A DNA stretch of 64,000 bases. Source: Paragordius varius. Taxonomy: Eukaryota > Animalia > Nematomorpha. Positions 7,328-57,539 of this stretch are shown piece after piece. The first letter of the stretch is position 1. Every line of letters begins with the position of its first letter. The translations under genes and the position numbers were made by a program. The stretch lies in contig OZ176055.1 in NCBI GenBank assembly GCA_964247055.1, positions 558,001-622,000 on the forward strand, in the 5' to 3' direction. The notes beneath the pieces are model-generated. The model was not told the DNA's origin. It worked only from the letters and a program-made list of their open reading frames with translations, and ran no database searches.

Positions 7328-7463
7328 GGCGGTAAGCGCGAACGCAAATCGTTAACACCCATACATTATGCGCTTAACGTGGCCCAATTTGGAGTAGTTT
7401 TAGCTATTAAAATCGAAGTGCAATGGTTAGCCTTTAACTAGGATATCTTCCCGATCAGAGAAA
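7328..7463 (-). pseudogene. U1: U1b snRNA 3' remnant (from nt 22), interrupted by retrotransposon
   Basis: Reverse complement contains CCATTGCACTTCG (SL2 loop), an Sm-like site and GCGTTCGCGCTTACCGCC (SL4). Its 5' side is joined to the element 3'UTR. Confidence 0.9.
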
Positions 7464-10400
7464 ATTAAAATTTATTAAGGATATGATATAAACATATCAA
7501 TAAAAATTGTAAAAGAAAAAGAGTAAAGGGATTGAAATATGGATAAATGGAAATATAATACACATCTCATTTGTATGATATTATAAGGAAAGGCTATAAA
7601 GGTGTAAATTTATAATATTTGTAAGAATAAAAATATATATAAGATAGAAAAAACGAACCTTCCTGGTTTCCAGTTAAGAGGGAGAAGGTTGGGTCTCCTA
7701 TAACACTAGTCGACATGGACATTATTAAGCACCACCACTCAAACTTTTTAAATTATGACTAATTTCAGTGTTTTAAAACCGAATTTAAAAAAATTTTGAA
7801 ATTTTATAGGTTTTTCAATTTTTCAAAAACAAGAGAAAATTGAGAGAAAATCAAATATAACTCTATAATAAAATGTTATTATATTATAAACTTAATATCA
7901 TTTAATAAATTAAACTCTATCTTATATATAAATATGTCATTTAAATATCAGAGAGAAAAAAATAGTACGGACTTAAACGTCAAAATTTAGTCTTTTTTTT
8001 AAGTGAATTTTTAACACATATAAATTTTTTTTAAAAAAATACTAAAATAGGCATTCTATGGTTTAAACCTTCGGCTTTCAGATAGGCTATATTTTTTTTG
8101 TTAGTTTTCGTTGAGTACTTATTAGACTTTTTCTCTTGAGTTGGTTCTTATAAAAAATCCTTTATTTATACCTAGTGGATATACCTTATTTTTTTAAAAA
8201 TTATTGGTTGTTTTGTATTTTGAATTTCAGATGGATGTTGTGTAGCCACTTTTAGTAGAATTTACTGTTATGGGATTGGACCATTTGTATTTACCTAATT
8301 TATATTCAATTTAATTGTAGAATTTATCTAACTTTATTCTGCAAATTGGTTAATTTGACATGTCAATTTGCCTGGATTTTGCTTGCAAGTCTCTCTTATC
8401 GGACTTTACGATTACTTATTGTTATCTTTGCCACATCTGGCATAATTATAGGATCGCTTGGGGGATATGCAGAGCTTGTGCTGCCGCCCGGATCTATCAC
8501 ACTATACATAAGTCCCTTTTAGATTTTTAATACTTTGGCTCTTAGCTTGTTTAGTACTTATTTAATGCCTAGAATTTGTTATCCATGCATGGAATATTAC
8601 TTGTATCGACTTGCTCGTTTGAATATTTAAAATATGTGCACGAGGAATGATTGTTATTTTTGAATTAAATACAAAATTAAAAATTAAATTTTGGAAAAAT
8701 CCTATTGGTGGCCTCAATTTTCTTTTTTGTTTTGGCCTTTCCATGCCATTAGGTATTAGAAAATGCAAAAATAATGGGATCTCCAATTCTTAACCCACTG
8801 GTTTTTGCCCGAGAATAAGAAGGATTGGGAAGATTTATCGAAGGCGACACATTCCATTATCCTCTCTTGGTTTGAAAGGTGGTGAAAATTCAAGTCCTTC
8901 TCACCTCTTTATTGCATTCCGGAACAGGTGAACAAGGGAATTTAAATCTAGAACTATTGTACTTTGACGAAAATAAATGGCGTAAAGATTCATCAAGGGG
9001 GGCCCATGTCACGGCAAGCGAGAATGAAGATTTGCGAGCCAGTGACCATAGGTTCGCGTAAATAATATGGCTAATCATCTTCCTTGGCGGAAAGGTAGTT
9101 GCATATGATTCTGAGATGGGGTAGAGGTAAGTCTATACCTTTCTTTGACTGAGTTCTTCCTGAGCTTTATTTTTTGACCATTGGGTCTTTTGAATGCAGC
9201 AATTTAAAGGCTGCATCAATTCATGTTATAATCGCTTTTTAGCTGCTGGATGCCCAGGGCTCCGTTATTCCTTGATGCAATGTAGTTGTTAGTAGCATCT
9301 TTTAGGAGCCCTAGTATTGGTTTTAGGATACTCAGCAACTGTATATCAAGTTTGTCTCTGGTGGCGAAGTTAAATTGATTTAATCGTAGGTATTATGTTA
9401 GTTGGGTAAGAGAAGCTTTTGATTGCGTCTAATTTTTGCCAAGGGGCAAGGTTAAATTTAGCAATTTTGTCAGCTAATTCAACATCGGGGGGAGGGCCTA
9501 TTATATCCCAGATAATTTATGGTTTAGTGGGCCTCACATTTAGGAATCTTTATATCATTTATCAAGAATATGTAATTATTGTTGACATGAATATTGGAGT
9601 ATTTTGCAGGATTAACATCGAGGTGAATTTGATTTAGTTCATAACAATAAAATCAATATTGTTTTGGTGATCCATTTTATTATGGAATATGCATATGATG
9701 TCAGCTGCATATGCATTAAATCAATCCCCTTATCAGAATATCACCTGATGATATTTTTTAGACCTTATGAATAGGAGCCCTGAAAGAAGGCATCCTTGTT
9801 TTATTCCCCGGTCCAGTTTTATCGGGGAAGTAATCTCATTTCCGGCGCAAATGAATAAGTTTGCTAGGAAATTTTATTTAGATGTTCTCTGGGACTCCTA
9901 GCCTTTTTAGAATGTTGAGGATGATCGGGTGCGGGATTTTGTCATACGCATTTGAAATGTCAATGCATGTGACATGAGCTTGTTTTTTTTTCTCTTTGAA
10001 GAGATCAAGTTTGGATTTTATGATGTAATTGAGCTCGAAGCACCCGTCATAAGGGAGGAAGCCCTTTTGACGGGAAGCTAGTAGTTGGTTTGTTACGAGA
10101 TGCTGGGTGATTTATTCAAAACTAGGGCCGCGAATAGACTGTACAGGCAAGTGAGGGCAATGGATCGCGTGTTTTTTAAGGTGTTTTTATCACTATGTTT
10201 ATGGATCAAAAGGGTTATGGAGTGGTTCCATGAAGTAATAATCTTCCTGTGTTGGAGACAGAGATTAAATAGGCTAGTTAGAATGATAGCTTTAGAATCC
10301 TTATTTTTTAGGTCTCTGTAGCTTATTCCATCGGGCCCGGGTGACGTGTTTCCATTTTTTTTTTCGGGACTTATGTACAATTGAAAGAATATGACATCAT

Positions 10401-10876
10401 TGGAGAGGGAACAGAATCATTATTAATGAATGGTGCTGGGAGGTTATTATTGTAAAGGGATTGAGAGCGTTGTTTAATCTCAGCAATCGGGGAAGTGCAG
10501 TAGGTGTGGGATCCCTGAGTGATTAACCGGATGGCTCTTCTTCTGTTGAAACGATATATTTTCTGAACGTATTTAGGGGATAAATTAACTTGCTGGGGAG
10601 GATTTGCGTTTTAAAGTTGGGTGTGTGCTTGTTGCAATGAATGAAAAAAGTCATATCTAATAATGCATCAACTTCTTCCCAGCTTTCAGTTGAAATTAAA
10701 GTCAGTTTTTGAAGGAGAAATTTTAAAGTTACCTGCTCAGATGGGGAGTTACTTGGATTAGGTATAGGTGTAATTGGTAATGAGCTGGTGATAATAGGGA
10801 TTAGATTGGACTTTTTGGTGGAATTGATAGTTTGGTTTTCAAGTTTTTTTCTTTTACTCGGGTTTGGAGGTTGACG
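7464..10876 (-). mobile_element. U1-inserted RLE retrotransposon, gamma-type 3'UTR, 5'-truncated, RLE deleted, with a ~1.07 kb insertion (about 7702-8776)
   Basis: 3'UTR at 7464-7655 joins the ARLNLLPLN segment (7655-7700), which resumes at about 8777. RT motifs (GPDG, ALTCLYSLF, KQG) lie at 9700-10380. Confidence 0.8.
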
Positions 10877-12905: not shown

Positions 12906-12949
12906 TGTTGATTTTTTAAAAAAACTAAATTTTAGTTTATTAGATATAA

Positions 12950-13061
12950 AGCGGTAAGCGCGAACGCAAACCGCCAACACCCATAAATTATGCGCTTAAC
13001 GTACCACAATTTGGAGTAGTTATAGCTATCAACTAGGATATCTCCCTTCTTAATCGGAGAA
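12950..13061 (-). pseudogene. U1: U1b snRNA 3' remnant with a 30-nt deletion of upper stem-loop II
   Basis: TTCTCCGATTAAGAAGGGAGATATCCTAGTT|GATAGCTATA...GCATAATTTATGG...GCGTTCGCGCTTACCGC. It lacks AAAGGCTAACCATTGCACTTCGGTTTTGCT, which is present at 48307-48336. Confidence 0.9.
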
Positions 13062-13295
13062 ATTTTAATTTATTAAAAAAGGGTATTATAAATATATTAT
13101 AAACAATTGCTAAAGAAAATGCAAAGGTATTGTGTAAATTAAATAATAAGGGAAAGAAGACCAAGCGTGAGTGGGAGATTGCAAAGAAAACATATAACAA
13201 AATTTGTTGTAGTATAAATGCTGAATGTTTTAATAAATAATATATAATGAAATATAAAGAGTAACAGTGTGGATGAAATGTGAGGTTTGATAGAT

Positions 13296-15642
13296 TTAAT
13301 TTTGATTTGAGCAAGCAGGCTGGTCATTGAGAGGGTCGACTAAGGGGGTAGTGCTTGGCGGTTGGATGTTCCGACCACTGATGAATAGGTGGTAGATATC
13401 ACAGGAGGATTTGAGCACTTCTGCGATGAGGTCCTGCTTGATACGGTTGGGGTATTTTATACCGAGTGCATCGAAGAGTTTGTCATTTCGGGGGTACCAG
13501 GAGCCTAGAGCTCCTATCACCACTGGGATAATTTCAACGTTGGAATATTTTTCAGAGAGGGAGCAAATTACCATTTTGATCCCTTTATTTTTTAGGGGGA
13601 TCGTATTTTGTTAGCTTGGTGTTAAAAGCATCGTCTAAAGATGATATTCTGTTTTCATAAGGGATTGTGGGGTCAATAATGTAACAATTGGTATTATCAA
13701 TTATCACTAGGTCGGGACGAAGGTTTGATTCATCAACCTTTTGATTTTCGGAGATAATCGAGAATTTTTTGGGTAGTATTGATTTAATGTAGTCAACCAC
13801 TCTGTTGTGACGCTCAGTTACAATACCTGTGTCTAACAGGCAGTGGTTGATTACATGAGACCCGGATTCGATCCGGTTCTTGCACCTTCTGCAAGATGTG
13901 TCGTCAAACCTTTCCGGTTTGCTATTAAGAGGAAGGTTGAGTCTGGCCCTATAGATAGATCTCCAATCCTTAAACCTCAGGTTTTTGCCTGAGAATAAGG
14001 AGTGTGAAGATTTATCCAAGGCGACACATTCCATTATCCTACCTTGGTTTGCAATTTGGTGGAAATTCAGGTCCTTCTCACCTCTTATTGCATTCCGGAA
14101 AAGATTGACGAGGGAATTTTTTAGATCAGGAACTATCAGTTTATGATGCAACTGAATGGCAAAGGAAGAGTCACCCAGGAGGACCCAGGTCGCACCCAGT
14201 GAAATTGAGGACTTGCGAGCAAGAGACCATACATTAGCGTAATTGGTATAGCCATTCGCCTCCTATTCCTTGCCGGAGAGATATTTGCATAATTGGTCAT
14301 GAGATGGTGATGTGGTGAGTCTGCACCTTTTTTTAACTGTAGAATTGAGTTCGTCCTGGGCTTTTTTGACCATGGGGTCATTAGTCTGAAGCAGTTTAAA
14401 AGCTGCATCGATAATGAAGATGTTGAAATCACTTTTTAGCTGCTGAATACCTAGGGCTCCCTTACTCCTCGATGCAAAGATATAGTTGTTAGTAGCATTT
14501 GGGAGCCCTAGTATTGGTTTCAGTATGCGCATCATTTCCGTGTCTAATTTATCACTTGTGGCGTAATTGAACTGATTCAAACGAAGGTAATAAGTTAAAG
14601 TTGGATAGTAAAAGCTTTTGATTGCGTCTAATTTTTGCCATGGGGCAAGAATTGATTTGGCAATTTTGTCAGCTAGTTCAATGTCTGGGAGAGGAATAGT
14701 AGGGAACAACCCTATTGGATTTCCCAGGTATTTTATGGTTTGATGGACCCCACGATTGGGGATCCTTGTATCATTTATCAAAAAAGAGGAATTGCTGTTG
14801 ACGTTGATGTTTGAGCATTTTTCAGGATTGACATTATGATGCATCAGATTCAGTTCGTTAACAATAAAGTTGATGTTGCTTTGATGTTCACTTTCATTGC
14901 GGGATATGCATATGATGTCATCAGCATATGCATACAGATCAATCCCCCTATTGGAGGCCCGCTTCATGATCTCATTCAAACCGATTATAAACAAGAGCCC
15001 TGAGATGGGGCTACCTTGTTTGATGCCCCTGTTTAGATTAATCGGAGAAAGGACCTCATTACCGGCACGTTGGATGTTTTGGCCAGTGAGAAGGAGGTTA
15101 CAATGAGGGATATTATGCCATTCGAAACACCAACCCTTTTAAGGTTGTTTAATATGATTGAGTGCGGCATTTTATCAAACGCATATGTTAATGCATGTGA
15201 CATGAGCTTGTTTTTTCTTCTTTTTAGAGAGATCAAGTTTAGATTTTATCATGTAATTCAGCTCAAAGCACCCGTCATAAGGGAGGAAGCCCTTTTGATG
15301 GGGAGCTAGTAAATGGTTTGTTATGAGATGTTGAGTGATTTTGTTCGAAACTAGTGCAGCGAAAAGCCTTTATAGGCAACTGGTTAGATCGATGGGTCGC
15401 CAGTTTTTTAAATTGTCTTTAGCACCATGCTTATGGATTAAAATGGTGGTGGAGTGGTTCCAAGAAGAGGGAATCTTTCTGTGCTGTAAACAGAGATTAA
15501 ATAGTTTGGTTAGAATGATTGCTTTTGGATCTTTGTTTTTTAAGTCTCTGTAACTGATACCATCAGGCCCGGCTGAGGTGTTTTCCATTTTCTTTAGTTT
15601 ATCGGAAACTTCCGTGCAGTTGAATGAGATCTCCGGCATCAT
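13296..15642 (-). pseudogene. RT-CCHC-RLE part of the element ORF, fragmented by frameshifts
   Basis: ORF-track fragments 15370-15642, 14263-14994, 13585-14151 and 13296-13574 are colinear with the 411-aa RT ORF at 51004. Confidence 0.9.
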
Positions 15643-16209
15643 TGGTGGGGAAACAGGATCATCATTAATGAGAGGTGCTGAGAGGTTATTGTTGTAAAGG
15701 GTTTGAAAGTGTTCTTCTATCTCGGTAATCGGGGCCGTGCAGCAGGCGGGTGGACCTTGGATAATTAGCCGGATGGCTCTTCTTCTGTTTAAACGATATA
15801 TTATTTGAATGTATTTAGGGTAGAGGTTAATTTGCTGGGGAGGGTTTGAGATTTTAGATTGGTTGGCTGTTTGTTGTATTGGATGAAAGAAGTCATTAAG
15901 TTCTAATACGAATGCATCTACTTCTTCCCAGTTATCAGCTTAGATTACAGTAAGTTTTTGAAGGAGGGAGGATAAATTTAATTGCTCAGGTGGTGAGTGA
16001 TTTGGATTAGCTAAGGGTGAGCTTGGTCGTCAGTTGGTAATATCTATAGGGTTTAGATTGGGCTTTTTGGTAGGATTGATGGTGGATTGGTTTACAACCT
16101 TTTTCCTCTTACACAAGGGTTTGGAGGTTGGTGCAGAATTATCAACCTCAATGTTCCAGTTTTAGGAGGTAGTGGCAGACTCAGACTCGATCGAAGTCAG
16201 GATGTTGAA

Positions 16210-17202
16210 TCAATTGCTTAGATCAATGTGTGGTGTACAAGGATTATAGAAATCAGACTCGAAAAGGTCATGATCTGAATCCTCGTTATTATTATTGTTA
16301 TTAGTGATGCGGTGCATAAGATTAGAATGGAATTTCAGATTAAGTAATGATTTAGTTTTGATAATTGGATTACGTGGTGGATCATGAAATCTTTCGTGCT
16401 TACGTAGGCTTGAGACTCTTTGGAAGGATAGGGAGCATTTAGAGCATTTTTTAAAAAAACTTTTTAACGGTATAGGGTTGTCCCAGTGGGGGCAGGATGG
16501 CAGTTGTGAGCTAGGGGTTGTCCCAATGTCCACATTGCAAGGATAGCATCTGTGAGCGACTGTAGGGGTACAATTTTGCTTATCCTTCAGGTGTCTGAGC
16601 AGGGACAGCTTCTGTGATGTCCAGATTGAGCAGCGGCTAGACATCAAGCAATCATCGTAAGGGCAAACAAAGTGGTTTGCCAACGGAAAAAAGAGGGTGA
16701 GAACATTATTTACTAAAGTAGGCTGTTTGCCAAAAGCCGGGTTCACAGTTGTGGTGTATTTTTGTTGTTGCCGAGTGTGAGAGATGGCAGCGTGTGTTGG
16801 AGCGGGATTAGACTTCTCATTAATGTTTGGTATGTTCAGACACTCATTAGTGAGATCTTGGCAGGGTGGATTATCAAAAAAGACTGCAGCAGCTTCAAAA
16901 CCAGGTCTACTTATTGTTGATGAAGTGGTACAGATTGGAGATGATGTAGATGAGGCGATTGTGTTGATAACTGGACTAGAATATATCGAAGTTAAGTTGA
17001 GTGTTAAAAGATATGATGATAAGGAAGATGTAATCTGACTGTGAGACGGTAGAGTGTTATGGATAACATGTGTGATGGAGAAAGAGCTAGAGGCAGCAGT
17101 TGAACTTGACGCGTGGCATGGTAAACTGGGAAAGTGTTCCTCATCAATTATTAATCTAGGAGTATCTTCATAAAATGGTTCAATTTCATATGTGTTCTGC
17201 AT
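16210..17202 (-). CDS. N-terminal region of the retrotransposon protein (330 aa open), with three zinc fingers
   Basis: CPYDDC...LLRHLKDK(Q here, H in copy 2); CYPC...(Q)LPSC, a CCHC-like finger with the expected His replaced; CSKC...LRKHERFH, a classic C2H2. The same frame continues to the RT through four stop codons. Confidence 0.8.
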   Translation of the reverse strand: MQNTYEIEPFYEDTPRLIIDEEHFPSLPCHASSSTAASSSFSITHVIHNTLPSHSQITSSLSSYLLTLNLTSIYSSPVINTIASSTSSPICTTSSTISRPGFEAAAVFFDNPPCQDLTNECLNIPNINEKSNPAPTHAAISHTRQQQKYTTTVNPAFGKQPTLVNNVLTLFFPLANHFVCPYDDCLMSSRCSIWTSQKLSLLRHLKDKQNCTPTVAHRCYPCNVDIGTTPSSQLPSCPHWDNPIPLKSFFKKCSKCSLSFQRVSSLRKHERFHDPPRNPIIKTKSLLNLKFHSNLMHRITNNNNNNEDSDHDLFESDFYNPCTPHIDLSN

Positions 17203-17402
17203 GGAAAGATAAGAGAATAAATGTTAATGGATAGAATCAATAAAGATAAGATATTTATAGATAAGAATGAGTATAAGAAAAGTGAATGCAGAATCTAATA
17301 ATAAGCGAAAAAAAACAGGATATGGTAAGGTTAAATTAATAAAGATTAATAAATGCAGTGAAAAAAGTCAGATAAAATTTGGACAGAGTTTCGCCGTGCA
17401 AC

Positions 17403-17424
17403 AAATCCTGCGCCAAGTAAGTAC
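17403..17424 (-). pseudogene. U1: U1b snRNA 5' end (nt 1-22) at the element 5' junction
   Basis: Reverse complement GTACTTACTTGGCGCAGGATTT matches intact U1b at 48254 except nt 1. The upstream spacer is homologous to the one upstream of 48254. Confidence 0.92.
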
Positions 17425-18953: not shown

Positions 18954-21900
18954 CTTCATCTACATCATCTCCAATTTGTACCACTTCATCAACAATAAGT
19001 AACCTGGTTTTGATGCTGCTGCAGTCTTTTTTGATAATCCACGCTGCCAAGATCTCACTAATGAGTGTCTGAACATACCAAACATTAATGAGAAGTCTAA
19101 TCCCGCTCCAACACACGCTGCCATCTCTCACACTCGGCAACAACAAAAATACACCAAAACTGTGAACCCGGCTTTTGGCAAACAGCCTACTTTAGTAAAT
19201 AATGTTCTCACCCGCTTTTTTCCACTGGCAAACCACTTTGTTTGCCCTTACGATGATTGCTTGATGTCTAGCCGCTGCTCAATCTGGACATCACAGAAGC
19301 TGTCCCTGCTCAGACACCTGAAGGATAAGCACAATTGTACCCCTACAGTCGCTCACAAATGCTGTCCTTGCAATGTGGACATTGGGACAACCCTATACCG
19401 TTAAAAAGTTTTTTTACAAATGCTCTAAATGCTCCCTATCCTTCCAAAGGGCCTCAAGCCAGCCTACGTAAGCACGAAAGATCTCATGATCCACCACGTA
19501 ATCCAATTACCAAAACTAAATCATTACTTGATCTGAAATTCCATTCTAATCTTATACACCGCATCAATAACAATAATAATAACGAGGATTCAGATCATGA
19601 CCTTTTCGAGTCTGATTTCTATAATCCTTGTACACCACACATTGATCTAAGCAATTGATTGAACATCCTGACTTCGATCGAGTCTGAGTCTGCCACTACC
19701 TCCTAAAACTGGAACATTGAGGTTGATAATTCTGCACCAACCTCCAAACCCTTGTGTAAGAGGAAAAAGGTTGTAAACCAATCCTCTTACCAAAAAGCCC
19801 AATCTAAACCCTAATGATATTACCAACTGACCACCAAGCTCACCCTTAGCTAATCCAAATCACTCACCACCTGAGCAATTAAATTTATCCTCCCTCCTTC
19901 AAAAACTTACTGTAATCTAAGCTGATAACTGGGAAGAAGTAGATGCATTCGTATTAGAACTTAATGACTTCTTTCATCCAATACAACAAACAGCCAACCA
20001 ATCTAAAATCTCAAACCCTCCCCAGCAAATTAACCTATCCCCTAAATACATTCAAAAAATATATCGTTTAAACAGAAGAAGAGCCATCCGGCTAATTACC
20101 CAAGGTCCACCCGCCTACTGCACGGCCCCGATTACCGAGATAGAAGAACACTTTCAAACCCTTTACAACAAAACCCTCTCAGCACCTCTCATTAATGATG
20201 ATCCTGTTTCCCCACCTATGATGCCGGAGATCTCATTCAATTGCACGGAAGTTTCCAATAAACTAAAATGGAAAACACCTCAGCCGGGCTTGATGGTATC
20301 AGTTACAGAGACTTAAAAAACAAAGATCCAAAAGCAATCATTCTAACCAAACTATTTAATCTCTGTTTACAGCACAGAAAGATTCCCTCTTCTTGGAACC
20401 ACTCCACCACCATTAGCCCTCACCAGTTGCCTTTATAGGCTATTCGCGGCCCTAGTCGCCAATAAAATAAGTAAGCACCTCATCTCAAATCAACTTCTAG
20501 CTCCCTGTCAAAAGAGCTTCCTCCCTTATGACGGGTGCTTTGAGCTGAATTATATGATAAAATCTAAACTTGATGTTTTTAAAGAAAAGAAACAACATGC
20601 TAATATCACTTGTATAGACATATCCAACGCCTTCGATAAAATCCCACACCCGATCATTCTACACAACCTGAAAAGGGTAGGTGTATCGGATGGCACGATC
20701 TCTCTCCTCGCAAATTCTTTATCAATGGCTACCACATCTATCCGCGCCGGCAATGAGTTTACCTCTCCGGTTAAACTTGGCAGGGGCATGAAACAAGGAT
20801 GCCCCCCCTCAGGTCTCCTATTCATAATCGGCCTAAACGAGATTATCAGGAGAGCCTCCGATAAAGGGTACGATTTATTTGCATATGCAGATGATATCAT
20901 CTGCATATCCGGCAATAATATAGATCATCAACTGAATATTAACTTCATTCAATGAACTTAAGATTCAACTTGATGTCAACCCAGGAAAATGTTATAATAT
21001 TAATGTCAACAACGATTATTCATTTTCGATAAATAATATAAAGATCCCTAATTGTGGGGCTCACCAAACCATAAAATATCTGGAAAATCCAATAGGGTTA
21101 TTCCCTACTATTCCCCTGCCAGATATTGAACTAGAGGACAAAATTGCCAAATCTAATCTTGCCCCATGGCAAAAATTATACGCAATCAAAAGCTTTTACT
21201 ATCCAACTTTAACTTATTACCTTCGTTTGAATCAGTTCAATTACGCCACAAGTGATATAGACACGGAAATGATGCGCATAATGAAACCAATACTAGGGCT
21301 CCCAAAAGATGCTACTAACAACTATATCTTTGCATCGAGGAGTAAGGGAGCCCTAGGTATTCAGCAGCTAAAAAGTGATTTCAACATCTTCAGGATCGAT
21401 GCAGCTTTTAAACTTATCCATTCAAATGACTCCACGATAAAAAATTATGCACAGGAAGATCTAAAGCTAACAGTTAAAAAAAAAGGTATAGACTGACCTC
21501 AGATCCATCTCATGACCTACTATGCAATTATCTATCAGACAAGGAAGAGGCGAGTGGCCATATCAATTACGCTAACGTATGGTCACTCGCTCGCAAGTCC
21601 TCAATTTCACTGGGTGCGTCCTGGGTCCCCCTAGGCGGCTCTTCCTTCGCTATTTAATTCCAACAAAATTTAATAGTCCCAGATTTAAAAAATTCCCTCG
21701 TCAATCTTTTCCGGAATGCAATAAGAGGTGAGAAGGACCTGAATTTCCACCATCTTGCAAACCAAGGTAGGATAATGGAATGTGTCGCCTTGGATAAATC
21801 TTCACATTCCTTCTTATTCTCAAGCAAAAACCTGAAGTTTAAGGATTGGAGATTTATCCATAGGGCCAGACTCAACCTTCTCCCTCTTAATAGCAAACCG

Positions 21901-22751: not shown

Positions 22752-22892
22752 CCATCGCGATCTAGAAGGCGATACCCTTAGTTTGAGACTTGGCCATTGC
22801 ACCTCGGCCAAGTTGAAGGCTACGATTGCTCCAAATGGGGGCAAGCCGAGCGCATAATTTCTGGCTGCCGGGTTCTGCGTACGCGCAGAACC
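22752..22892 (+). pseudogene. U1: U1a snRNA nt 22-162 after the insertion
   Basis: CCATCGCGATCTAGAAGGCGAT...CCATTGCACCTCGG...GCATAATTTCTGG...GGTTCTGCGTACGCGCAGAACC; nearly identical to intact U1a. Confidence 0.95.
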
Positions 22893-27293: not shown

Positions 27294-27425
27294 TTACAAT
27301 TTATTAAATAAGTAATATAAGAATTTAAATACATTCTGTAAAAGAAAAGGCATAAATAGGATTTACTTATGAATAATATAGGATATATAATACGTAGCAA
27401 AGTTAATACTCATTGTGAATTTTAA

Positions 27426-27430
<5 letters not shown>

Positions 27431-42701: not shown

Positions 42702-42844
42702 TTTCTTTGATCAAGAAGGGAGATATCCTAGTTAAAATTTAACCATTGCACTTCGGTTTTGCTGATAGCTCTAACTACTCCAAATTGGGGTACGTTAACC
42801 GCATAATTTATGGGTTTTAACAGTTTGCGTTCGCGCTTACTACC
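42702..42844 (+). pseudogene. U1: U1b 3' remnant from nt 22
   Basis: GATCAAGAAGGGAGATATCC, CCATTGCACTTCGG, GCATAATTTATGG and GCGTTCGCGC are all present. Confidence 0.93.
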
Positions 42845-46530: not shown

Positions 46531-46680
46531 ATTTAATAAAGTAAGCTTTGGCCTCAGACCAAATATAACAGCAGAATACGAACTTCATATTTATTATTTT
46601 CAGTTAATATTTAATCATTAACTAAGTAAACACATTACTAATATGTATATTGTTAAACTAAATTAATTTTGTATGTAAAA

Positions 46681-46842
46681 GGTTCTGCGCGTACGCAGAA
46701 CCCGGCAGCCAGAAATTATGCGCTCGGCTTGCCCCCATTTGGGGCAATCGTAGCCTTCAACTTGGCCGAGGTGCAATGGCCAAGTCTCAAACTAAGGGTA
46801 TCGCCTTCTTGATCGCGATGGGCCCTCGCGCCAGGTAAGTGC
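46681..46842 (-). ncRNA. U1: U1 spliceosomal snRNA, isoform a, uninterrupted (162 nt)
   Basis: (GC)ACTTACCTGG 5'ss-recognition end, SL1 loop GATCAAGAAG with ATCGC/GCGAT stem, SL2 loop ATTGCAC, helix H GCGC/GCGC, Sm site ATAATTTCTGG and a perfect SL4 hairpin. The first two nt read GC rather than AT. Confidence 0.95.
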
Positions 46843-48253: not shown

Positions 48254-48417
48254 ATACTTACTTGGCGCAGGATTTTTCTCCGATCAAGAAGGGAGATATC
48301 CTAGTTAAAGGCTAACCATTGCACTTCGGTTTTGCTGATAGCTATAACTACTCCAAATTGGGGTACGTTAAGCGCATAATTTATGGGTGTTGGCGGTTTG
48401 CGTTCGCGCTTACCGCC
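48254..48417 (+). ncRNA. U1: U1 spliceosomal snRNA, variant isoform b, uninterrupted (164 nt), C9U
   Basis: ATACTTACTTGGCGC; SL1 TCTCC-GATCAAGAAG-GGAGA; SL2 loop ATTGCAC; Sm site ATAATTTATGG; SL4 GGCGG...GCGTTCGCGC...CCGCC. Confidence 0.95.
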
Positions 48418-48454
48418 TTATTATTTGTATGGTAAAATTTAGTTTTTTTTAAAA

Positions 48455-50634
48455 ATTTATTTTTTCTAAAGCACGGATGTTGATTTTTGGGGAGAGTACT
48501 ATGGAGGTTTTTATTCAGATGCTAGATATTCCGAACATTTATGAAAAGGTGGTAGATATCGCAGGAAATTTTGAGCACTTCCACGATGAGTTCTTGTTTG
48601 ATACGGTTGGGGTATTTTATACCGAATACATCAAATTTTGTCACTTCAAGGGACCATGAGCCTAGAGCTCCTATCACCACTGGGATAATTTCAACTTAGA
48701 ATATTTTGAAAAAAAGAGCAAATCAAATGATCGTATTTTGTAAGCATCTTCTGATGATACTCTATCATAAGGGATTGTGGGGTCGATAATGTAACAATTG
48801 GTATTATCAGTTATCACTAGGTCGGGACGCAGGTTTGAGTCATCAACCTTTTGATTTTCGGAGATGATCGAGAATTTTTTAGGTAGTATTGATTTATTGT
48901 AGTCAACCACTTTGTTGCGACGCTCGGTGACAATACCTGTGTCTAACAGGCATTGATTTATCACATGAGATCCGGATTCGATCCGGTTCTTGCACCTTCT
49001 GCAAGATGTACCGTCAAACCTTCCCGGTTTGCTATTAAGAGGGAGAAGGTTGAGTCTAGCCCTATGGATAAATCTTCAATCCTTAAACCTCAGGTTTTTG
49101 CCTGAGAATAAGAAGGAATGTGAAGATTTATCCAAGGCGACACATTCCATTATCCTACTTTGGTTTGCAAGGTGGTGGAAATTGATGTCCTTCTCACTTC
49201 TTATTGCATTCCGGAAAAGGTGGACGAGGGAATTTTTCATGTCTGGGACAATTAGACGTTCATGAAATTGAATAGCGAAGGAAGAGTCGCCTTGAGGGAC
49301 CCAGGTCGCACCCACTGAGATTGAGGACCTGCGAGCGAGTGACCATACGTTAGCGTAGTTGATATGGCCACTCGCCTCCTCTTCCTTGCCAGAGAGATAA
49401 TTACATATTTGGACATTGGATGGAGACGAGGTAAGTCTGTATCTTTTTTTTACTGTTGCCTTAAGTTCATCCTGAGCGTATTCTTTCACCATGGGGTCAT
49501 TTGAATGAATTAGTGTGAAAGCAGCGTCAATCCTGAATATGTTGAAATCAGTTTTTAGCTGCTGAATACCTAAGGCTTCCTTACTCCTGGATGCAAAGAT
49601 ATAGTTGTTTGTAGCATCTTTTTGGAGCCCTAGTATTGGTTTCAGTATGCTCATCATTTTCGTGTCTAATTTTTCGCTTGTAGCGTAGTTGAACTGATTT
49701 AGACGTAGGAAATAGGTTAATGTGGGGTAATAAAAACTTTTGATAGCATCTAATTTTTGCCAAGGAGCAAGATTAGATTTCGCTATTTTATCCGCAAGTT
49801 CAATATCTGGGAGGGGAATAGTAGGGAATAACCCTATTGGATTTCCCAGATATTTTATTGTTTGATGAACGCCACAATTGGGAATCCTTATATCATTTAT
49901 CAAGAAAAAGGAGTCACTGTTGACATTTATGTTTGAGCATTTAAGCGGGCTGACATCTAGAAGAATTTGCTTGAGTTCGTTGACTAGTCAATATTAAGTT
50001 GATGCTCTATTTTATTTTGGGATATGCATATGATGTCATCAGCATATGCATACAGCTCAATCCCTTTATTGGAGGCTCGCTTCATGATTTCATTCAATCC
50101 GATAATGAAAAGAAAACCTGAGAGGGGGCATCCTTGTTTGATGCCCCTGCCAAGTTTGACCGGAGCGGTAAACTCATTACCGGCGCGGATCGATGTGGTG
50201 GCCATTGATAACGAATTTGCGAGGAGGGAGATCGTGCCTTCCGATATACCCACCCTTTTCAGGTTGTGTAGAATGAACGGGTGTAGGATTTTATCGAAGG
50301 CATTGGCTATGTCTATGCAGGTGATATTTGCATGTTGTTTCTTTGCTTTAAAAGCATCAAGTTTAGATTTTATTATATAATTCAGCTCAAAGCACCCGTC
50401 ATAAGGGAGGAAGCCCTTTTGACGGGGAGCTAGAAGTTGATTTGAGACGAGATGCTTACTAATTTTATTGGCGACAAGTGCAGCGAATAGCCTATAAAGG
50501 CATCTAGTGAGGGCGATGGGTCGCCAATTTTTTAATGTGTTTTTGTCACCATGTTTGTGGATTAAAATGGTGGTTGAATGATTCCATGTGGTAGGGATCT
50601 TTTTGTGCAGTAAACATAAATTAAAAAGTTTGGT
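48455..50634 (-). mobile_element. Antisense element copy behind the intact U1b (RT to RLE, no 3'UTR)
   Basis: ORF fragments of 275, 89 and 96 aa; 49021-50634 is the near-perfect reverse complement of 51136-52745. Confidence 0.92.
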
Positions 50635-53532
50635 CTAGCTGATCCAAATAATTCTCTACCTGAACATTTAAACCTAACCTCCCTCCTCCAAAAACTCACT
50701 GAAATCCAAGCTGATAACTGGGAAGAAGTAGATGGACTATTATTAGAACTTGATAATTTCTTCCATCCATTACAACAAGCAGCCAACCATTCTAAAACCT
50801 CAAAATCTCCCCAGCAAATCAACCTATCCCCCAAATACATTTAAAAAATATATCGTTTCAACAGGAGAAGAGCCATCCGGCTAATTACCCAAGGTCCACC
50901 CGCCTACTGCACGGCCCCGATTACCGAGATAGAACATCACTTTCAAACACTTTACAACAGTAACCTCTCAGCACCTCTCATTAATGATCCTGTTTCCCCA
51001 CCAATGATGCCAGAGATCACATTCAATTGCACGGAAGTTTCCGATAAACTTAAGAAAATGGAAAACACCTCAGCCGGGCCTGATGGTATCAGCTTCAGAG
51101 ACATGAAAAATAAAGATCCCAAAGCGATCATATTAACCAAACTTTTTAATTTATGTTTACTGCACAAAAAGATCCCTACCTCATGGAATCATTCAACCAC
51201 CATTTTAATCCACAAACATGGTGACAAAAACACATTAAAAAATTGGCGACCCATCGCCCTCACTAGTTGCCTTTATAGGCTATTCGCTGCACTTGTCGCC
51301 AATAAAATTAGTAAGCACCTCGTCTCAAATCAACTTCTAGCTCCCCGTCAAAAGGGCTTCCTCCCTTATGACGGGTGCTTTGAGCTGAATTATATAATAA
51401 AATCTAAACTTGATGCTTTTAAAGCAAAGAAACAACATGCAAATATCACCTGCATAGACATAGCCAATGCCTTCGATAAAATCCCACACCCGATCATTCT
51501 ACACAACCTGAAAAGGGTGGGTATATCGGAAGGCACGATCTCCCTCCTCGCAAATTCGTTATCAATGGCCACCACATCGATCCGCGCCGGTAATGAGTTT
51601 ACCGCTCCGGTCAAACTTGGCAGGGGCATCAAACAAGGATGCCCCCTCTCAGGTTTTCTTTTCATTATCGGATTGAATGAAATCATGAAGCGAGCCTCCA
51701 ATAAAGGGATTGAGCTGTATGCATATGCTGATGACATCATATGCATATCCCAAAATAAAATAGAGCATCAACTTAATATTGACTTCATAGTCAACGAACT
51801 CAAGCAAATTCTTCTAGATGTCAACCCGCTTAAATGCTCAAACATAAATGTCAACAGTGACTCCTTTTTCTTGATAAATGATATAAGGATTCCCAATTGT
51901 GGGGTTCATCAAACAATAAAATATCTGGGAAATCCAATAGGGTTATTCCCTACTATTCCCCTCCCAGATATTGAACTTGCGGATAAAATAGCGAAATCTA
52001 ATCTTGCTCCTTGGCAAAAATTAGATGCTATCAAAAGTTTTTATTACCCCACATTAACCTATTTCCTACGTCTAAATCAGTTCAACTACGCTACAAGCGA
52101 AAAATTAGACACGAAAATGATGAGCATACTGAAACCAATACTAGGGCTCCCAAAAGATGCTACAAACAACTATATCTTTGCATCCAGGAGTAAGGAAGCC
52201 TTAGGTATTCAGCAGCTAAAAAAACATATTCAGGATTGACGCTGCTTTCACACTAATTCATTCAAATGACCCCATGGTGAAAGAATACGCTCAGGATGAA
52301 CTTAAGGCAACAGTAAAAAAAAGATACAGACTTACCTCGTCTCCATCCAATGTCCAAATATGTAATTATCTCTCTGGCAAGGAAGAGGAGGCGAGTGGCC
52401 ATATCAACTACGCTAACGTATGGTCACTCGCTCGCAGGTCCTCAATCTCAGTGGGTGCGACCTGGGTCCCTCAAGGCGACTCTTCCTTCGCTATTCAATT
52501 TCATGAACGTCTAATTGTCCCAGACATGAAAAATTCCCTCGTCCACCTTTTCCGGAATGCAATAAGAAGTGAGAAGGACATCAATTTCCACCACCTTGCA
52601 AACCAAAGTAGGATAATGGAATGTGTCGCCTTGGATAAATCTTCACATTCCTTCTTATTCTCAGGCAAAAACCTGAGGTTTAAGGATTGAAGATTTATCC
52701 ATAGGGCTAGACTCAACCTTCTCCCTCTTAATAGCAAACCGGGAATGCAGGAATCGAATTGAATCCGGCTCCCATGTGATAAACCACTGCCTGTTAGACA
52801 CAGGTATTGTGACCGAGCGTCACAACAAAGTGGTTGATTACATTAAATCAGTACTCCCCAAAAAATTCTCGATTATATCCGAAAATCAAAAGGTTGATGA
52901 ATCGAACCTTCGTCCCGACCTAGTGATAACTGACAACACCAATTGCCACATTATAGACCCCACAATCCCTTATGTAAATAGATTATCATCTTTAGACGAT
53001 GCATTTAATACCAAGCTAACAAAGTACGATCACCTAATTTGTTCCCTCTCCGAAAAATATTCCAACGTTGAAATTATTCCAGTGGTGATAGGAGCTCCAG
53101 GCTCCTGGTACCCCCGAAATGACAAACTCTTCGATGCACTCGGTATAAAATACCCCAACCGTATCAAGCAATATCTCATCGCAGAGGTGCTCAAATCCTC
53201 CTGTGATATCTACCACCTATTCATCAGTGGTCGGAACATCCAACCGCCAAGTGTGACCCCCATAGTCAACCCCCCTATCGACCTGCCTCCTTGCTCAAGT
53301 CAAAATTAAATCTATCCAACTTTGCATTTCATCCCCATTGTTATTTATATTTTATTACTTATTATTTATTAAAACAATCAGCATTTATATTACTACAAAT
53401 ATGTGATGTTTTCTTTGCAATCTCCCATTCACGCGTTGTCTCCTTTAATATTTAATTTACACAATACCTTTGCATTTTCTTTTACAGCAATTGTTTATAA
53501 TATATTTAAAATACCTTTTTAATAAATTAAAA
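50635..53532 (+). mobile_element. U1b-inserted beta-type element, 5'-truncated, least decayed copy
   Basis: 411-aa RT ORF plus 138-aa and 177-aa downstream ORFs; the 3'UTR ends TTTTTAATAAATTAAAA before U1b nt 22. Confidence 0.95.
51004..52239 (+). CDS. Reverse transcriptase domain of the RLE non-LTR retrotransposon (411 aa open; frameshifted at about 52220)
   Basis: GPDG, NWRPIALTSCLYRLF, QKGF, DIANAFDKIPH, GIKQGCPLS, YADD and KYLG motifs. Confidence 0.92.
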   Translation: MMPEITFNCTEVSDKLKKMENTSAGPDGISFRDMKNKDPKAIILTKLFNLCLLHKKIPTSWNHSTTILIHKHGDKNTLKNWRPIALTSCLYRLFAALVANKISKHLVSNQLLAPRQKGFLPYDGCFELNYIIKSKLDAFKAKKQHANITCIDIANAFDKIPHPIILHNLKRVGISEGTISLLANSLSMATTSIRAGNEFTAPVKLGRGIKQGCPLSGFLFIIGLNEIMKRASNKGIELYAYADDIICISQNKIEHQLNIDFIVNELKQILLDVNPLKCSNINVNSDSFFLINDIRIPNCGVHQTIKYLGNPIGLFPTIPLPDIELADKIAKSNLAPWQKLDAIKSFYYPTLTYFLRLNQFNYATSEKLDTKMMSILKPILGLPKDATNNYIFASRSKEALGIQQLKKHIQD

Positions 53533-53675
53533 TTTCTCCGATCAAGAAGGGAGATATCCTAGTTAAATACTAACCATTGCACTTCGGTTTTGCTGATAGC
53601 TATAACTACTCCAAATTGGGGTACGTTAAGCGCATAATTTATGGGTGTTGGCGGTTTGCGTTCGCGCTTACCGCC
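53533..53675 (+). pseudogene. U1: U1b nt 22-164 after the insertion
   Basis: Nearly identical to 48275-48417. Confidence 0.95.
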
Positions 53676-53709
53676 TTATTATTTGTATGGTAAAATTTAG
53701 TTTTTTTTA

Positions 53710-55280: not shown

Positions 55281-57400
55281 AAAGGTTTCCTTTTGTACGA
55301 AGGGTGCTTTGAGCTCAACCATACTATAAAGTCCAAACTCGATCTCTTCAAAGAAAAGAGAAAGCATTCTCACGTCACTAGCCTTGACATCTCCAATGCA
55401 TTTGCCTTCACCAAATCCTAAACAACCTGTAAAGGGTAGTTGTATCGGATAGCCTAATATATCTCATCGCAAACTCCCTTTCAATGGCCAAAACATCTAT
55501 TCGCGCCGGTAATGAGATTTCTTCCCCGATCCTTGACAGGGGCATCAAACTAGGATGCCCTCTCTCAGGCTCTTATTTATAATCGGATTAAATGAAATCA
55601 TCAAGCGGACCTCCGATAAAGGGATTGATCTATATGCATATGCAGATTACATCATATGCTTATCCCATAATGAAAGTGAACACCAAACAACATCAACTTT
55701 ATTGTCAATGAATTAAATCAAATTCACCTGGATGTTAATCCTGAAAAATGCTCCAATATTTTGCCAACAATAATTACAAATTCTTGATAAATGATATAAA
55801 ATTCCTAATTGTAGGGTACGCCAAACCATATAATATCTATGAAATCCAATAGGGTTATTTCCTACTATTCCCCTCAGACATAGAAGTTGAGAAAATTGCC
55901 AAATCTTACCTTACCCCTGGCAAAAGTTAGAGGCAATCAAAAGTTTTTATTACCCAACCTTAACCTACTACTTACGTTTAAACCAATTTACTTCGCCACC
56001 AGCGACTAGACACAGAAATGATGCGTATATTAAAACCAATACTAAGGCTCCCAAAAGATGCTACTAACAAATACATCATTGAGGAGTAAGAGAGCTCTGG
56101 ATATTCAGCAGCTAAAAAGCGACCTCAACATTTTTAGGATCGATGCTGCTTTTAAACTGCTTCACTCAAATGACCCGATTGTCAAAAATTATGCACAAGA
56201 TGAGCTCAATTCAACAGTTAAAAAAGATATATCACCTCACCCCATCTCATGATTAAATATGCATATGCCTTTCCGGCAAGGAAGATGATGCGTGTGACCA
56301 CATATTTTGAGATGATCACTTGCTCGCAAATCTCACTTGCTTCGACCTGGGTCCCCCTAGGAGACTCTTTCGCCATTAACCGCTAAAGTCTAATAGTCCC
56401 GGATTTAAAAAATTCCCTGGTCCACCTGTTCCGGAATGCAATAAGAGGTGAGAAGATCTGTATTTCCATTACCTTGTAAACCAAGGGAGGAATGGAATGT
56501 GTCGCATAGATAAATTTCCCATTCCTTCTTTTTCTGAGGCGAAAACTTGAGGTTTAATTATTGGAGATTTCATAGAACTAGACTCAACCTTCTCCCTTTT
56601 AACTGCAAACCGGGAAGTCATCGATATCTCTTGCAGGAGGTGCAAGAATTTGATTGAATTAGGATTTCATGTAATAAATCACTGCTTGATAAACACAGGC
56701 ATTATTACTCAACGGCATAACAAATTAGTAAATTATATCAAATCCATATTGCCCAAAGAATTCTATGTTGTATCTGAAAATCAAAAAGTTAATGACTCAA
56801 ACTTACGACTTGATATATTAATAACTGATAACACTAACTGCTACATTACAGACCCCCCTATAAAAAATGAGTGTTTTTATATAACGCATTTAACATCAAG
56901 CTTACTAAATATGATCACCTGATCTGCTCCTTCTCTAAAAAATACCTTAATGAGTGTTAAGAGCCTTAGGCAAATGACAAACTTATTGACGCACTTAAAA
57001 TAAAACACCTCACCCGTTTCAAACAAAAGCTTATCGCGTAATTGCTCAAATATTCCTGTGACATATACCACCTGTTCATCAGTGGTCCGAAAACTCTATC
57101 TAATATTTCCGCAATTGCCTCCCCTGTCGACCAACCTCAGTGGCCAAGCTAAAATTAGTCCTATGCACAACTCCCATTCTCAACTTTTTTCTATCTTATT
57201 TTAAATATATTTTTATTCTTACAAATATTATAAATTCCTTATACCTTTATAGCCTTTTCTTATATTATCACAAATGGCATTTGTAGTAAAACAATAGATG
57301 TGCCTATTATTTCCATTTATCCATATTTATTCATCCCTTGACTCTTTTTTTTACAATTTCTATTGATATGTTCATATTATATTCTTTGATAAATTTTAAT
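55281..57400 (+). mobile_element. U1b-inserted gamma-type element, 5'-truncated and decayed
   Basis: KGFLLYEGCFEL to RLE remnants; the gamma 3'UTR ends GATAAATTTTAAT at U1b. Confidence 0.88.
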
Positions 57401-57539
57401 TATCTCTGACCAAGAAGGGAGATATATTAGTTAAAGGCTAACCATTGCACTTCGGGTTTGCTGATAGCTATAACTCCAAATTGGCGTAAGTAAAGCGCAT
57501 AATTTATGGGTGTTGGTAGTTTTCGTGCGCGCTTACCGA
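57401..57539 (+). pseudogene. U1: U1b 3' remnant from nt 22
   Basis: GACCAAGAAGGGAGATAT, CCATTGCACTTCGG and GCATAATTTATGG are present. Confidence 0.9.

What the first reader, a model, noticed from the sequence alone, without database searches (positions are those of the whole stretch)
7328..57539. A non-LTR retrotransposon family that inserts site-specifically into U1 snRNA genes
Seen: 9 of 11 U1 loci have an RLE-retrotransposon 3' end (consensus about TAATAAATTNTAA) joined in the sense orientation immediately before U1 nt 22, 7 nt upstream of the SL1 loop GATCAAGAAG. The junctions are at 7463, 13061, 22752, 27293, 30590, 40051, 42702, 53533 and 57401. The attached copies carry three different 3'UTR types and different 5' truncations, so segmental duplication of one event cannot explain them all; at least three independent insertions are needed. 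Established: target-specific non-LTR elements are known for rDNA (R2), SL RNA (NeSL-1) and U2 snRNA (Utopia, Keno), and the Dada DNA transposons include U1-targeting families. Inference: this is a U1-specific RLE retrotransposon. I do not recall one being described, but I cannot search databases.
Basis: partly seen in the sequence, partly recalled or inferred. Interest (0 to 1): 0.95.

Follow-up and report, generated by a model that had tools for sequence, protein, structure and literature searches.

The report
Retrotransposons that target U1 snRNA genes
A cluster of U1 splicing-RNA genes in this compact animal-type genome has been hit repeatedly, always at the same nucleotide, by R2/Utopia-type jumping genes; I found no report of this target for the class, and a sister family with an intact gene elsewhere on the same contig (assembled sequence piece) looks recently active.

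Summary
The window holds 11 U1 loci: 2 are intact and 9 are cut at U1 nt ~21/22. Each cut locus is joined in sense to the A/T-rich 3' tail of an RLE (restriction-like endonuclease) non-LTR retrotransposon. One copy (13062-17402, minus strand) is full length and still has U1 nt 1-22 and the promoter at its 5' end.

Genome-wide, all 14 truncated U1 loci are cut at this site, and 4 U1 genes remain intact. Two element families, 43% identical in the RT domain, use the same site in three diverged U1 variants. Family 2 has an intact 1280-aa ORF, near-identical copies elsewhere, and an empty-site allele in another sequencing run.

dN/dS of 0.07-0.25 between copies means several active lineages inserted independently; one insertion copied by segmental duplication does not explain this.

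The nearest relatives, in this genome and outside it, sit in U2 at the published Utopia site. This is therefore a Utopia-lineage element whose target changed from U2 to U1.

Specificity is strong but not absolute: there is one off-target event for family 1 and at least three for family 2.

No U1-targeting non-LTR element appeared in the searchable literature. Repbase and Dfam could not be checked.

The scan noted the same thing before on other DNA of this genome (s1-313169, s1-266884).

The parts
13062..17402 (-). Copy d: full-length family-1 element (~4.34 kb, 3'UTR type 1) with both U1 junctions. The ORF is broken into pieces: N-terminal zinc-finger region 16210-17202, RT 14263-14994, CCHC plus PD..D nuclease 13585-14151.
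17403..17424 (-). U1-A nt 1-22, the 5' half of the gene split by copy d. The conserved -30 AATTTATAT promoter box is retained upstream.
12949..13061 (-). U1-A from nt ~22 (with an internal deletion), the 3' half of the gene split by copy d.
7468..10873 (-). Copy b: 5'-truncated family-1 element, 3'UTR type 3.
7331..7467 (-). U1-A truncated at nt ~22, attached to copy b.
18956..22751 (+). Copy e: 5'-truncated family-1 element, type 2, 84% identical to d over 3.8 kb.
22752..22895 (+). U1-B truncated at nt 22, attached to copy e.
27294..29100 (-). Copy g: 5'-truncated family-1 element, type 2.
27185..27293 (-). U1-B truncated at nt 22 and also 3'-truncated, attached to copy g.
29108..30589 (+). 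Copy h: 5'-truncated family-1 element, type 3, head-to-head with g.
30590..30726 (+). U1-A truncated at nt ~22, attached to copy h.
40052..41079 (-). Copy j: 5'-truncated family-1 element, type 2.
39909..40051 (-). U1-B truncated at nt 22, attached to copy j.
41095..42701 (+). Copy k: 5'-truncated family-1 element, type 3, head-to-head with j.
42702..42843 (+). U1-A truncated at nt ~22, attached to copy k.
46678..46842 (-). Intact U1-B gene: an uninterrupted target.
48254..48419 (+). Intact U1-A gene: an uninterrupted target. Its flank is near-identical to that of the disrupted unit at 53533.
50636..53532 (+). Copy o: 5'-truncated family-1 element, type 1, with the longest open RT piece (51004-52239, 411 aa).
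53533..53677 (+). U1-A truncated at nt ~22, attached to copy o.
55296..57400 (+). Copy q: 5'-truncated family-1 element, type 3.
57401..57539 (+). U1-A truncated at nt ~22, attached to copy q.
48525..50634 (-). Fragment n: an antisense, 3'-truncated element fragment that starts about 50 nt beyond the 3' end of the intact U1-A. Equivalent fragments lie at 5677-7221 (+), 10888-12847 (+), 30824-31362 (-), 42903-43522 (-), 53783-55280 (-) and 57649-57826 (-). All share one junction with the U1-A 3' flank.

Best explanation
These are single-ORF non-LTR retrotransposons of the restriction-like-endonuclease (RLE) type. They belong to the lineage that otherwise targets U2 snRNA genes (Utopia, NeSL clade) and have switched target to U1 snRNA genes.

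Shown:
- The protein has N-terminal C2H2-type zinc fingers, RT, a CCHC knuckle and a PD-(D/E)xK nuclease.
- Copies lie in the sense orientation inside U1 genes. Their precise 3' junction is at the 5' base of stem-loop 1: nt 21/22 in variants A and B, and nt 19/20 in the one-base-shorter variant C.
- Comparing the filled and empty alleles shows no target duplication and at most a 2-nt target loss.
- 5' ends are variable and often truncated.

Inferred:
- Integration is by target-primed reverse transcription. The nuclease nicks the U1 antisense strand at this position, and the A/T-rich, non-polyadenylated 3' tail of the RNA is copied from that nick.
- The 7-8 nt just 3' of the nick differ between the three U1 variants. 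Recognition therefore probably relies on the invariant flanks (ACTTACYTGGCGC upstream, GATCAWGAAGG downstream), read by the N-terminal zinc fingers. That region differs most from the U2-targeting sister family.
- The element sits behind an intact U1 promoter and may be co-transcribed with U1. One off-target copy carries 10 nt of downstream U1, which shows that template RNAs read into U1.

The window's own family is dead: every copy is broken. Sister family 2 has an intact ORF and appears recently active.
For: Anatomy:
- Junctions and ORF pieces.
- Pfam finds RVT_1, C2H2 and a PD-(D/E)xK-like domain.
- The best PDB matches are R2 proteins at E = 1.7e-69.

Site specificity:
- All 14 truncated U1 loci in the 110-Mb genome are cut at the same site and abut an element tail.
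- Family-1 3' ends: 12 lie in U1 against one duplicated off-target event.
- Family 2 (L074) has U1 nt 1-19 at its 5' end and U1 from nt 20 at its 3' end.

Independent insertions:
- The two families are 43% identical in RT.
- Three U1 variants with compensatory differences are all used.
- The disrupted unit at 53533 has a flank near-identical to the intact gene at 48254.
- dN/dS between copies is 0.07-0.25 at dS 0.3-1.7, whereas probable in-place duplicates give 0.5-0.6.

Recent activity of family 2:
- Copies on C4 and C8 are 99.6% identical to it.
- An empty-site contig in run X1 has depth 177, against 213 for the filled junction. That empty site is absent from this assembly.

Lineage:
- An RT clade (SH-aLRT 98) unites both U1 families with a U2 family of the same genome.
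- U2-flanked elements lie on all sides of it.
- The in-genome U2 junction is at U2 nt 39, as published for Utopia (PMC4640811).
- A single origin of U1 targeting is not rejected (AU p = 0.645).

Other support:
- The N-terminal region is 22-43% identical between the U1 and U2 sisters, against 50-56% in RT-RLE.
- The conserved promoter box is retained upstream of both split genes.
Against: - Specificity is not absolute. Family 2 has 99.6%-identical 5'-truncated copies outside U1 on C8 and C4, plus an older off-target copy amplified 11 times on C7. Family 1 has one off-target event on C11/C29.
- No RNA data were available, so transcription, co-transcription from the U1 promoter and current activity are inferred.
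- No ribozyme or other processing signal was found at the 5' junction.
- Much of the window's array was built by segmental duplication, probably with gene conversion, so the count of independent events is a minimum estimate and not an exact number.
- The empty-site contig is short (30 nt on its shorter side). It could come from an unassembled paralogue and not from an allele.
- Placement within named Utopia rests on U2-flanked relatives; Repbase reference sequences were not compared.
Confidence: 0.88

Rival explanations
1. One ancient, non-specific insertion happened to land in a U1 gene. It was then multiplied by segmental duplication, and gene conversion from intact U1 genes created the appearance of several U1 variants being hit.
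For: The U1-A units are clearly segmental duplicates that share a downstream junction. Copies n and p are 97% identical in the compared 3' region. n against o (dS 0.11) suggests gene conversion between neighbours. The U1 part of L010 is 100% identical to the intact U1-B gene.
Against: Two families only 43% identical in RT sit at the same nucleotide. dN/dS of 0.07-0.25 between copies shows that the divergence arose in active elements and not in dead duplicates. An empty-site allele and 99.6%-identical dispersed copies exist for family 2. The sister lineages are demonstrably site-specific for U2.
Confidence: 0.03
2. The element-U1 joints are chimeric retrocopies. Reverse transcription started on U1 RNA and switched template to element RNA, as in L1-snRNA chimeras. 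They would then not be insertions into U1 genes.
For: Non-LTR reverse transcriptases can switch templates, and snRNA chimeras are known for L1 (my own knowledge). One off-target copy carries 10 nt of U1 after its tail.
Against: Homology to intact genes continues beyond the mature U1 3' end into the gene's flank (A2). Both full-length copies have U1 nt 1-19/22 plus the conserved promoter box at their 5' ends. The joined empty site reconstitutes an uninterrupted U1. Copies lie in U1 gene clusters and are not dispersed.
Confidence: 0.02
3. The elements are ordinary U2-targeting Utopia elements with relaxed specificity that sometimes land in U1, for instance by tethering to snRNA-gene transcription machinery and not by reading U1 DNA.
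For: Published Utopia families vary from strict to weak specificity (PMC4640811). U1 and U2 genes can be linked (L082). Off-target copies exist here.
Against: No copy of either U1 family was found next to U2, and no copy of the U2 families was found next to U1. The junctions are nucleotide-precise in three U1 variants. The two kinds form separate lineages.
Confidence: 0.05

Closest known systems
Utopia (U2 snRNA gene-targeting RLE non-LTR retrotransposons, NeSL clade; Kojima and Jurka 2015, PMC4640811)
   Same: Single ORF with N-terminal zinc fingers, RT, and a C-terminal zinc knuckle plus PD-(D/E)xK nuclease, with no Myb domain found. Sense insertion at one precise position in the 5' part of a spliceosomal snRNA gene. 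Precise 3' junction and variable 5' junction, with the 5' gene fragment often lost. Disrupted genes outnumber intact ones. Several lineages coexist in a low-copy target. Occasional off-target copies occur. The nearest relatives in this genome and elsewhere are inserted at U2 nt 38/39.
   Different: The target is U1 (nt 21/22, at the base of stem-loop 1) and not U2 (nt 38/39). The paper lists no U1 target. The N-terminal zinc-finger region is strongly diverged from the U2-targeting sister.
Dada-U1 (DNA transposons in zebrafish U1 genes; PMC3706591, PMC8869645)
   Same: The target gene family is U1 snRNA, and insertion is orientation-specific at one site.
   Different: Dada elements are DDE-type DNA transposons that make 6-7 bp target duplications, and they insert at a different site in the U1 body (target duplication GCGAAT/GCGAAC). 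Here the elements are RT/RLE retrotransposons with no duplication.
Keno (U2-targeting non-LTR retrotransposons with an AP-like endonuclease)
   Same: A non-LTR retrotransposon specific for a spliceosomal snRNA gene.
   Different: [quoted passage not shown]
R2 (28S rDNA-specific RLE retrotransposon)
   Same: The overall architecture is the same and the mechanism is presumed to be the same (target-primed reverse transcription). R2 proteins are the best solved-structure matches (E = 1.7e-69). R2 is co-transcribed with its host gene.
   Different: The target is a Pol II snRNA gene and not rDNA. No Myb domain was detected. No 5' self-cleaving ribozyme was detected.

Membership tests
Utopia (NeSL clade) | Single ORF with N-terminal zinc finger(s), RT, and a C-terminal zinc finger plus restriction-like endonuclease | tested here: met
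   Pfam finds C2H2 at 248-270, RVT_1 at 568-810 and a PD-(D/E)xK-like region at 1113-1214. CCHC and PD..D motifs are visible in the ORF pieces of copy d.
Utopia (NeSL clade) | RT groups phylogenetically with U2-inserted elements | tested here: met
   A clade with SH-aLRT 98 unites both U1 families with an in-genome U2 family. The sister clades also contain U2-flanked elements, from a springtail, a spider and metagenomes.
Utopia (NeSL clade) | RT groups with the named Repbase Utopia families, apart from NeSL-1, R5, HERO and R2 | not testable with these tools
Utopia (NeSL clade) | Inserted in, or associated with, U2 snRNA genes at nt 38/39 | tested here: not met
   No copy of either family is next to U2; their target is U1 nt 19-22. 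The sister families in the same genome do meet this feature.
Utopia (as separated from R2 by Hassan et al. 2026, PMC13188248) | Lacks the R2 hallmark Myb domain | tested here: met
   No Myb family was reported by Pfam at E up to 1. This is a weak test, because divergent Myb domains can be missed.
R2 | Inserted at the conserved 28S rDNA site | tested here: not met
   All informative flanks are U1, or non-rDNA off-targets.
Site-specific RLE non-LTR retrotransposons in general | Precise 3' junction at one target nucleotide, with variable or truncated 5' ends | tested here: met
   14 of 14 truncated U1 loci are cut at the same site. 5' truncation points range from reference positions 548 to 3440.

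The most novel reading that the evidence does not exclude
This is the first U1 snRNA gene-specific non-LTR retrotransposon lineage. It arose by a U2-to-U1 target switch inside Utopia and is still active (intact ORF, presence/absence polymorphism). The change of specificity would be encoded mainly in the diverged N-terminal zinc fingers, and the element would be expressed as a read-through transcript of the U1 gene it occupies. Together with its U2-targeting sisters in the same genome, it would be a natural matched pair for working out how RLE retrotransposons are retargeted.
Probability: 0.55. Interest if true: 0.75.

Novelty: new variant of a known kind. Interest (0 to 1): 0.62.

Why it matters
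Target-specific RLE retrotransposons, R2 above all, are being developed as tools for site-specific gene insertion, and how their specificity evolves is an open question. This genome holds closely related lineages (43% RT identity, in one well-supported clade), some of which hit U2 at nt 38/39 while others hit U1 at nt 21/22. That makes it a natural retargeting experiment with an intact representative on each side. It also adds U1 to the short list of multicopy RNA genes used as safe havens by non-LTR elements. Finally, a genome with only about 18 U1 loci tolerates 14 disrupted ones, which parallels the Utopia/U2 situation in oomycetes and wasps.

Tried and rejected
- The word-indexed protein search gave only weak, generic RT hits. 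The exhaustive HMMER search was needed to find relatives.
- Rfam found no ribozyme or any other RNA family besides U1 in the intact element locus, so R2-style 5' self-cleavage is not supported.
- No RNA run holds the element, so expression could not be tested. All laid runs were contigs, which cannot show transcript starts or ends.
- I considered that the antisense fragments downstream of every U1-A mark a second specific target site. I rejected this because all seven share one junction at which the element is 3'-truncated inside its ORF. Target-primed insertion cannot produce that, and the first ~35 nt after U1-A resemble the U1-B flank and so are genuine gene flank.
- I considered twin priming for the head-to-head pairs. 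I rejected it because the two arms overlap extensively in element coordinates and differ in sequence.
- I considered using the different 5' truncation points as proof of independent insertion. I set this aside because inverted-repeat centres are prone to secondary deletion.
- One literature search was wasted on loose settings. The Fell et al. inventory of RLE elements is not in the library.
- The organism's name is coded and could not be established. Telomeres are TTAGGG repeats.


Full report
**1. Observation**

Rfam finds 11 U1 loci in the window. Two are full length: 46678-46842 (-) and 48254-48419 (+). Nine score lower because the model's first ~21 positions are not U1.

I aligned all 11 with 80 nt of upstream flank (A1) and read the nine claimed coordinates directly. 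Every truncated locus begins at U1 nt ~22, which is 7 nt before the loop GATCAAGAAG. Each is preceded by an A/T-rich tail of the form TTAATAAATTnTAA.

The U1 genes fall into two variants that differ by compensatory stem changes:
- Variant A: 48254, 53511, 57377, 42687, 30573, 13076, 7467.
- Variant B: 46842, 22738, 40065, 27315.

Both variants are cut at the same position. The three 3'UTR types are real.

**2. Anatomy of the element**

A U1 5' half (nt 1-22) lies at 17403-17424 (-) and runs directly into element 5'UTR. The matching 3' junction is at 13061. Copy d (13062-17402, ~4.34 kb) is therefore a full-length element that splits one U1-A gene.

Its ORF pieces encode:
- an N-terminal region with C2H2-type fingers;
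- RT (Pfam RVT_1);
- a CCHC knuckle;
- a PD..D nuclease motif.

A self-BLAST with d as reference shows that each of the nine junctions belongs to a copy of this family, at 67-88% identity. All copies except d are 5'-truncated, and all have stop codons.

**3. The whole genome**

The window is C6:558001-622000 of a 110.6-Mb assembly in 44 contigs. Telomeres are TTAGGG repeats. The organism's name is withheld.

Rfam finds 17 U1 loci genome-wide. Four are intact and 13 are truncated. One more truncated copy, with an internal deletion, turned up by alignment (L079). All 14 truncated loci are cut at the same site and abut an element tail.

I searched with element sequence that contains no U1 and with U1-independent 3'UTR motifs:
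- Twelve family-1 3' ends lie in U1.
- Three lie at C11:474k, C11:644k and C29. These share one non-U1 flank, so they count as one duplicated off-target event.

**4. A second family that is intact**

A protein search of the genome found relatives at 43% RT identity with open frames of about 1280-1290 aa.

One of them, at C6:3.726 Mb (L074), is a complete element of ~4.1 kb with an uninterrupted 1280-aa ORF.
- Its 5' end follows U1 nt 1-19.
- Its tail (…AAATAAATAAATA) is followed by U1 from the equivalent of nt 22.
- This U1 is a third variant, C, which is one base shorter.

Pfam finds a C2H2 finger, RVT_1 and a PD-(D/E)xK-like region, and no Myb domain. The best solved-structure matches are R2 proteins at E = 1.7e-69.

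Genome-wide, family-2 3' ends are as follows:
- Two lie in U1: the intact copy and an 81%-identical older one.
- Two 99.6%-identical 5'-truncated copies lie outside U1, on C8 and C4.
- One older off-target copy was amplified 11 times within a ~20-kb tandem unit on C7.

The C4 copy carries 10 nt of the downstream U1-C sequence after its tail and then unrelated DNA. The template RNA therefore read into U1, which points to a U1-resident source copy.

**5. Evidence from other sequencing runs**

The intact element is held by runs of several coded organisms: A at 0.84 of the sampled words, B at 0.71 and C at 0.21. I laid contigs of four runs on L074:1401-6000.
- Run X1 has a contig that joins position 1638 to 5743 with GG between. 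This reconstitutes an uninterrupted U1-C. Its depth is 177, against 213 for the filled 5' junction contig.
- That empty-site sequence is absent from this assembly even with two mismatches allowed. It is most simply an allele without the insertion, although an unassembled paralogue cannot be excluded.
- Comparing filled and empty forms shows no target duplication and at most a 2-nt loss.
- Organism C's copy continues upstream with …CGCGGGAG before the shared CTCTG. The L074 5' junction may therefore lie in a CGCGG microhomology with U1.
- Run X4 has a contig in which the same U1-C position is preceded by AATAAATTGTAA, the family-1 type-2 tail. L008 in this assembly shows the same joint.

**6. 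How many independent insertions?**

The truncated copies form five head-to-head inverted pairs, at 10873/10888, 29100/29108, 41079/41095, 50634/50636 and 55280/55296, with 1-15 nt of filler between the arms. Such centres can lose sequence secondarily. In addition, all seven U1-A units, including the intact gene, share at least 300 nt of downstream flank and so are segmental duplicates (A2).

Independence is shown in other ways:
- (a) Two families at 43% RT identity use the same nucleotide.
- (b) Three U1 variants are used.
- (c) The disrupted unit at 53533 has a flank near-identical to the intact unit at 48254, while its element (o) is closest to d, which sits in a different unit.
- (d) Codon-based comparison gives dN/dS of 0.07-0.25 at dS 0.3-1.7 between copies of different types, and also between d and o. 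Probable in-place duplicates (a/i/l and b/k) give 0.5-0.6.

Most of the divergence therefore accumulated in active elements. I estimate that at least five or six lineages entered these U1 clusters separately.

One caveat applies to (d). Codons with gaps or stops were excluded and only BLAST-alignable parts were used, which biases dN/dS somewhat downward. The contrast with the duplicate pairs still holds.

**7. Relatives and placement**

Rfam on the loci of the other in-genome relatives shows that they abut U2. The junction reads …TTAATAAATTATA followed by TCTGTTCTTATCAG, which is U2 from nt 39. This is exactly the Utopia site (PMC4640811). Their 3' tail also resembles that of the U1 elements.

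The exhaustive HMMER search found no protein above 39% identity outside this genome. Named hits come from a springtail and a spider and are annotated generically as R2. I fetched eight external contigs. Six have informative flanks, all six are in U2 and none is in U1.

An RT tree gives these groupings:
- Both U1 families sit with one in-genome U2 family in a clade with SH-aLRT 98.
- A second in-genome U2 clade and the external U2-flanked clade join it in a group with support 99.

Holding the two U1 families together is not rejected and in fact scored better than the free search (AU p = 0.645).

By parsimony, U2 is the ancestral target and U1 is derived, through one switch or possibly two.

Between the intact U1 element and its U2 sister, the N-terminal 400 residues are 22-43% identical, against 50-56% in RT-RLE. 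The recognition helix of the classical C2H2 finger differs: KSNLTAH against RMSLLSH.

**8. Mechanism**

What is shown and what is inferred are listed under Best explanation. The 7-8 nt just 3' of the junction differ between the variants: TTTCTCC in A, CCATCGC in B and CCAATCGT in C. A protein that reads DNA must therefore use the invariant flanks.

Both split genes keep the conserved -30 box found upstream of all intact U1 genes (A4). Co-transcription from the U1 promoter is therefore possible but untested.

**9. Literature**

Full-text searches with several wordings found no non-LTR retrotransposon described as U1-specific.
- The Utopia paper lists U2 only. For related families it lists SL, tRNA, rDNA and microsatellite targets.
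- U1 is a known target of Dada DNA transposons only, and at a different site.
- Recent R2 reviews mention Utopia only as U2-specific or weakly specific.

Repbase, Dfam and the Fell et al. inventory could not be searched.

Other readers, and one follow-up agent of this scan, noted the same elements on neighbouring DNA. That is not independent support.

**10. Verdict**

It is best filed as a new target-specificity variant within a known kind: snRNA-gene-targeting RLE retrotransposons of the Utopia lineage. The window's family is extinct, and a sister family appears recently active.

Noticed in passing
window 48420-48525 and the equivalent flank of every U1-A unit (7221-7330, 12847-12948, 30727-30824, 42844-42903, 53678-53783, 57540-57649): Every U1-A gene, including the intact one, is followed about 50 nt downstream by an antisense element fragment that is 3'-truncated inside its ORF at one common junction. 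Despite this shared junction, the fragments fall into about three lineages separated by low dN/dS (0.1-0.2). Duplication plus gene conversion from neighbouring copies is my guess, but this is not resolved.
   Followed up: partly
window 10873/10888, 29100/29108, 41079/41095, 50634/50636, 55280/55296: Five head-to-head inverted pairs of 5'-truncated copies are joined by 1-15 nt of filler, with different truncation points in each arm. U1 nt 1-21 and the promoter are missing at these sites. This is similar to the loss of the U2 5' fragment reported for oomycete Utopia.
   Followed up: partly
window 48254-48419 (+), 46678-46842 (-); L003, L004: The four intact U1 genes of the genome differ in the 5' splice-site recognition arm: ACTTACTT (C9U) in variant A and in C6:3718k, and GC or C in place of AT at the first bases in others. 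They also carry compensatory stem changes, so this organism seems to rely on very few, heterogeneous U1 genes.
   Followed up: no
L049-L053, L063, L064, L066, L067 (C5:12.73/12.78 Mb, C6:10 kb, C3:0.29-0.48 and 4.53 Mb, C6:10.10 Mb, C8:8 kb): At least three lineages of Utopia-type elements with intact ORFs of 1170-1410 aa sit in U2 genes at nt 38/39. Several are subtelomeric.
   Followed up: partly
G000 C7:8.516-8.736 Mb (L075-L078): Eleven copies of a family-2-like 3' end (76-79% identity) with identical non-U1 flanks are spaced about 8-26 kb apart. This looks like one old off-target insertion amplified as part of a large tandem repeat of unknown content.
   Followed up: partly
L055 (C4:7793794-7794149, minus strand): A 99.6%-identical 5'-truncated family-2 copy ends with its normal tail, then 10 nt of U1-C (CCAATCGTGA), then unrelated DNA. 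This looks like a short 3' transduction from a source copy that resides in U1.
   Followed up: yes
L022, L025, L026 (C11:474k, C11:644k, C29:2.9k): Family-1 type-2 tails are joined to a shared non-U1 sequence that begins TCAACTTCAACC. Rfam finds no RNA family there. It may be one off-target event that was later duplicated, or an unrecognised repeated target.
   Followed up: partly
U1 and U2 target sites (window 48275-48291; L049 U2 junction): Both targets carry an ATCA(A)G motif 8-9 nt downstream of the insertion point: GATCAAG in U1 and TATCAG in U2. This could be chance, or a shared recognition element that eased the target switch.
   Followed up: no
window 60745-61534 (-) and 62512-62579 (+): Further degraded fragments of the same element family (68-76% identity) lie here with no U1 next to them within the window.
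   Followed up: no
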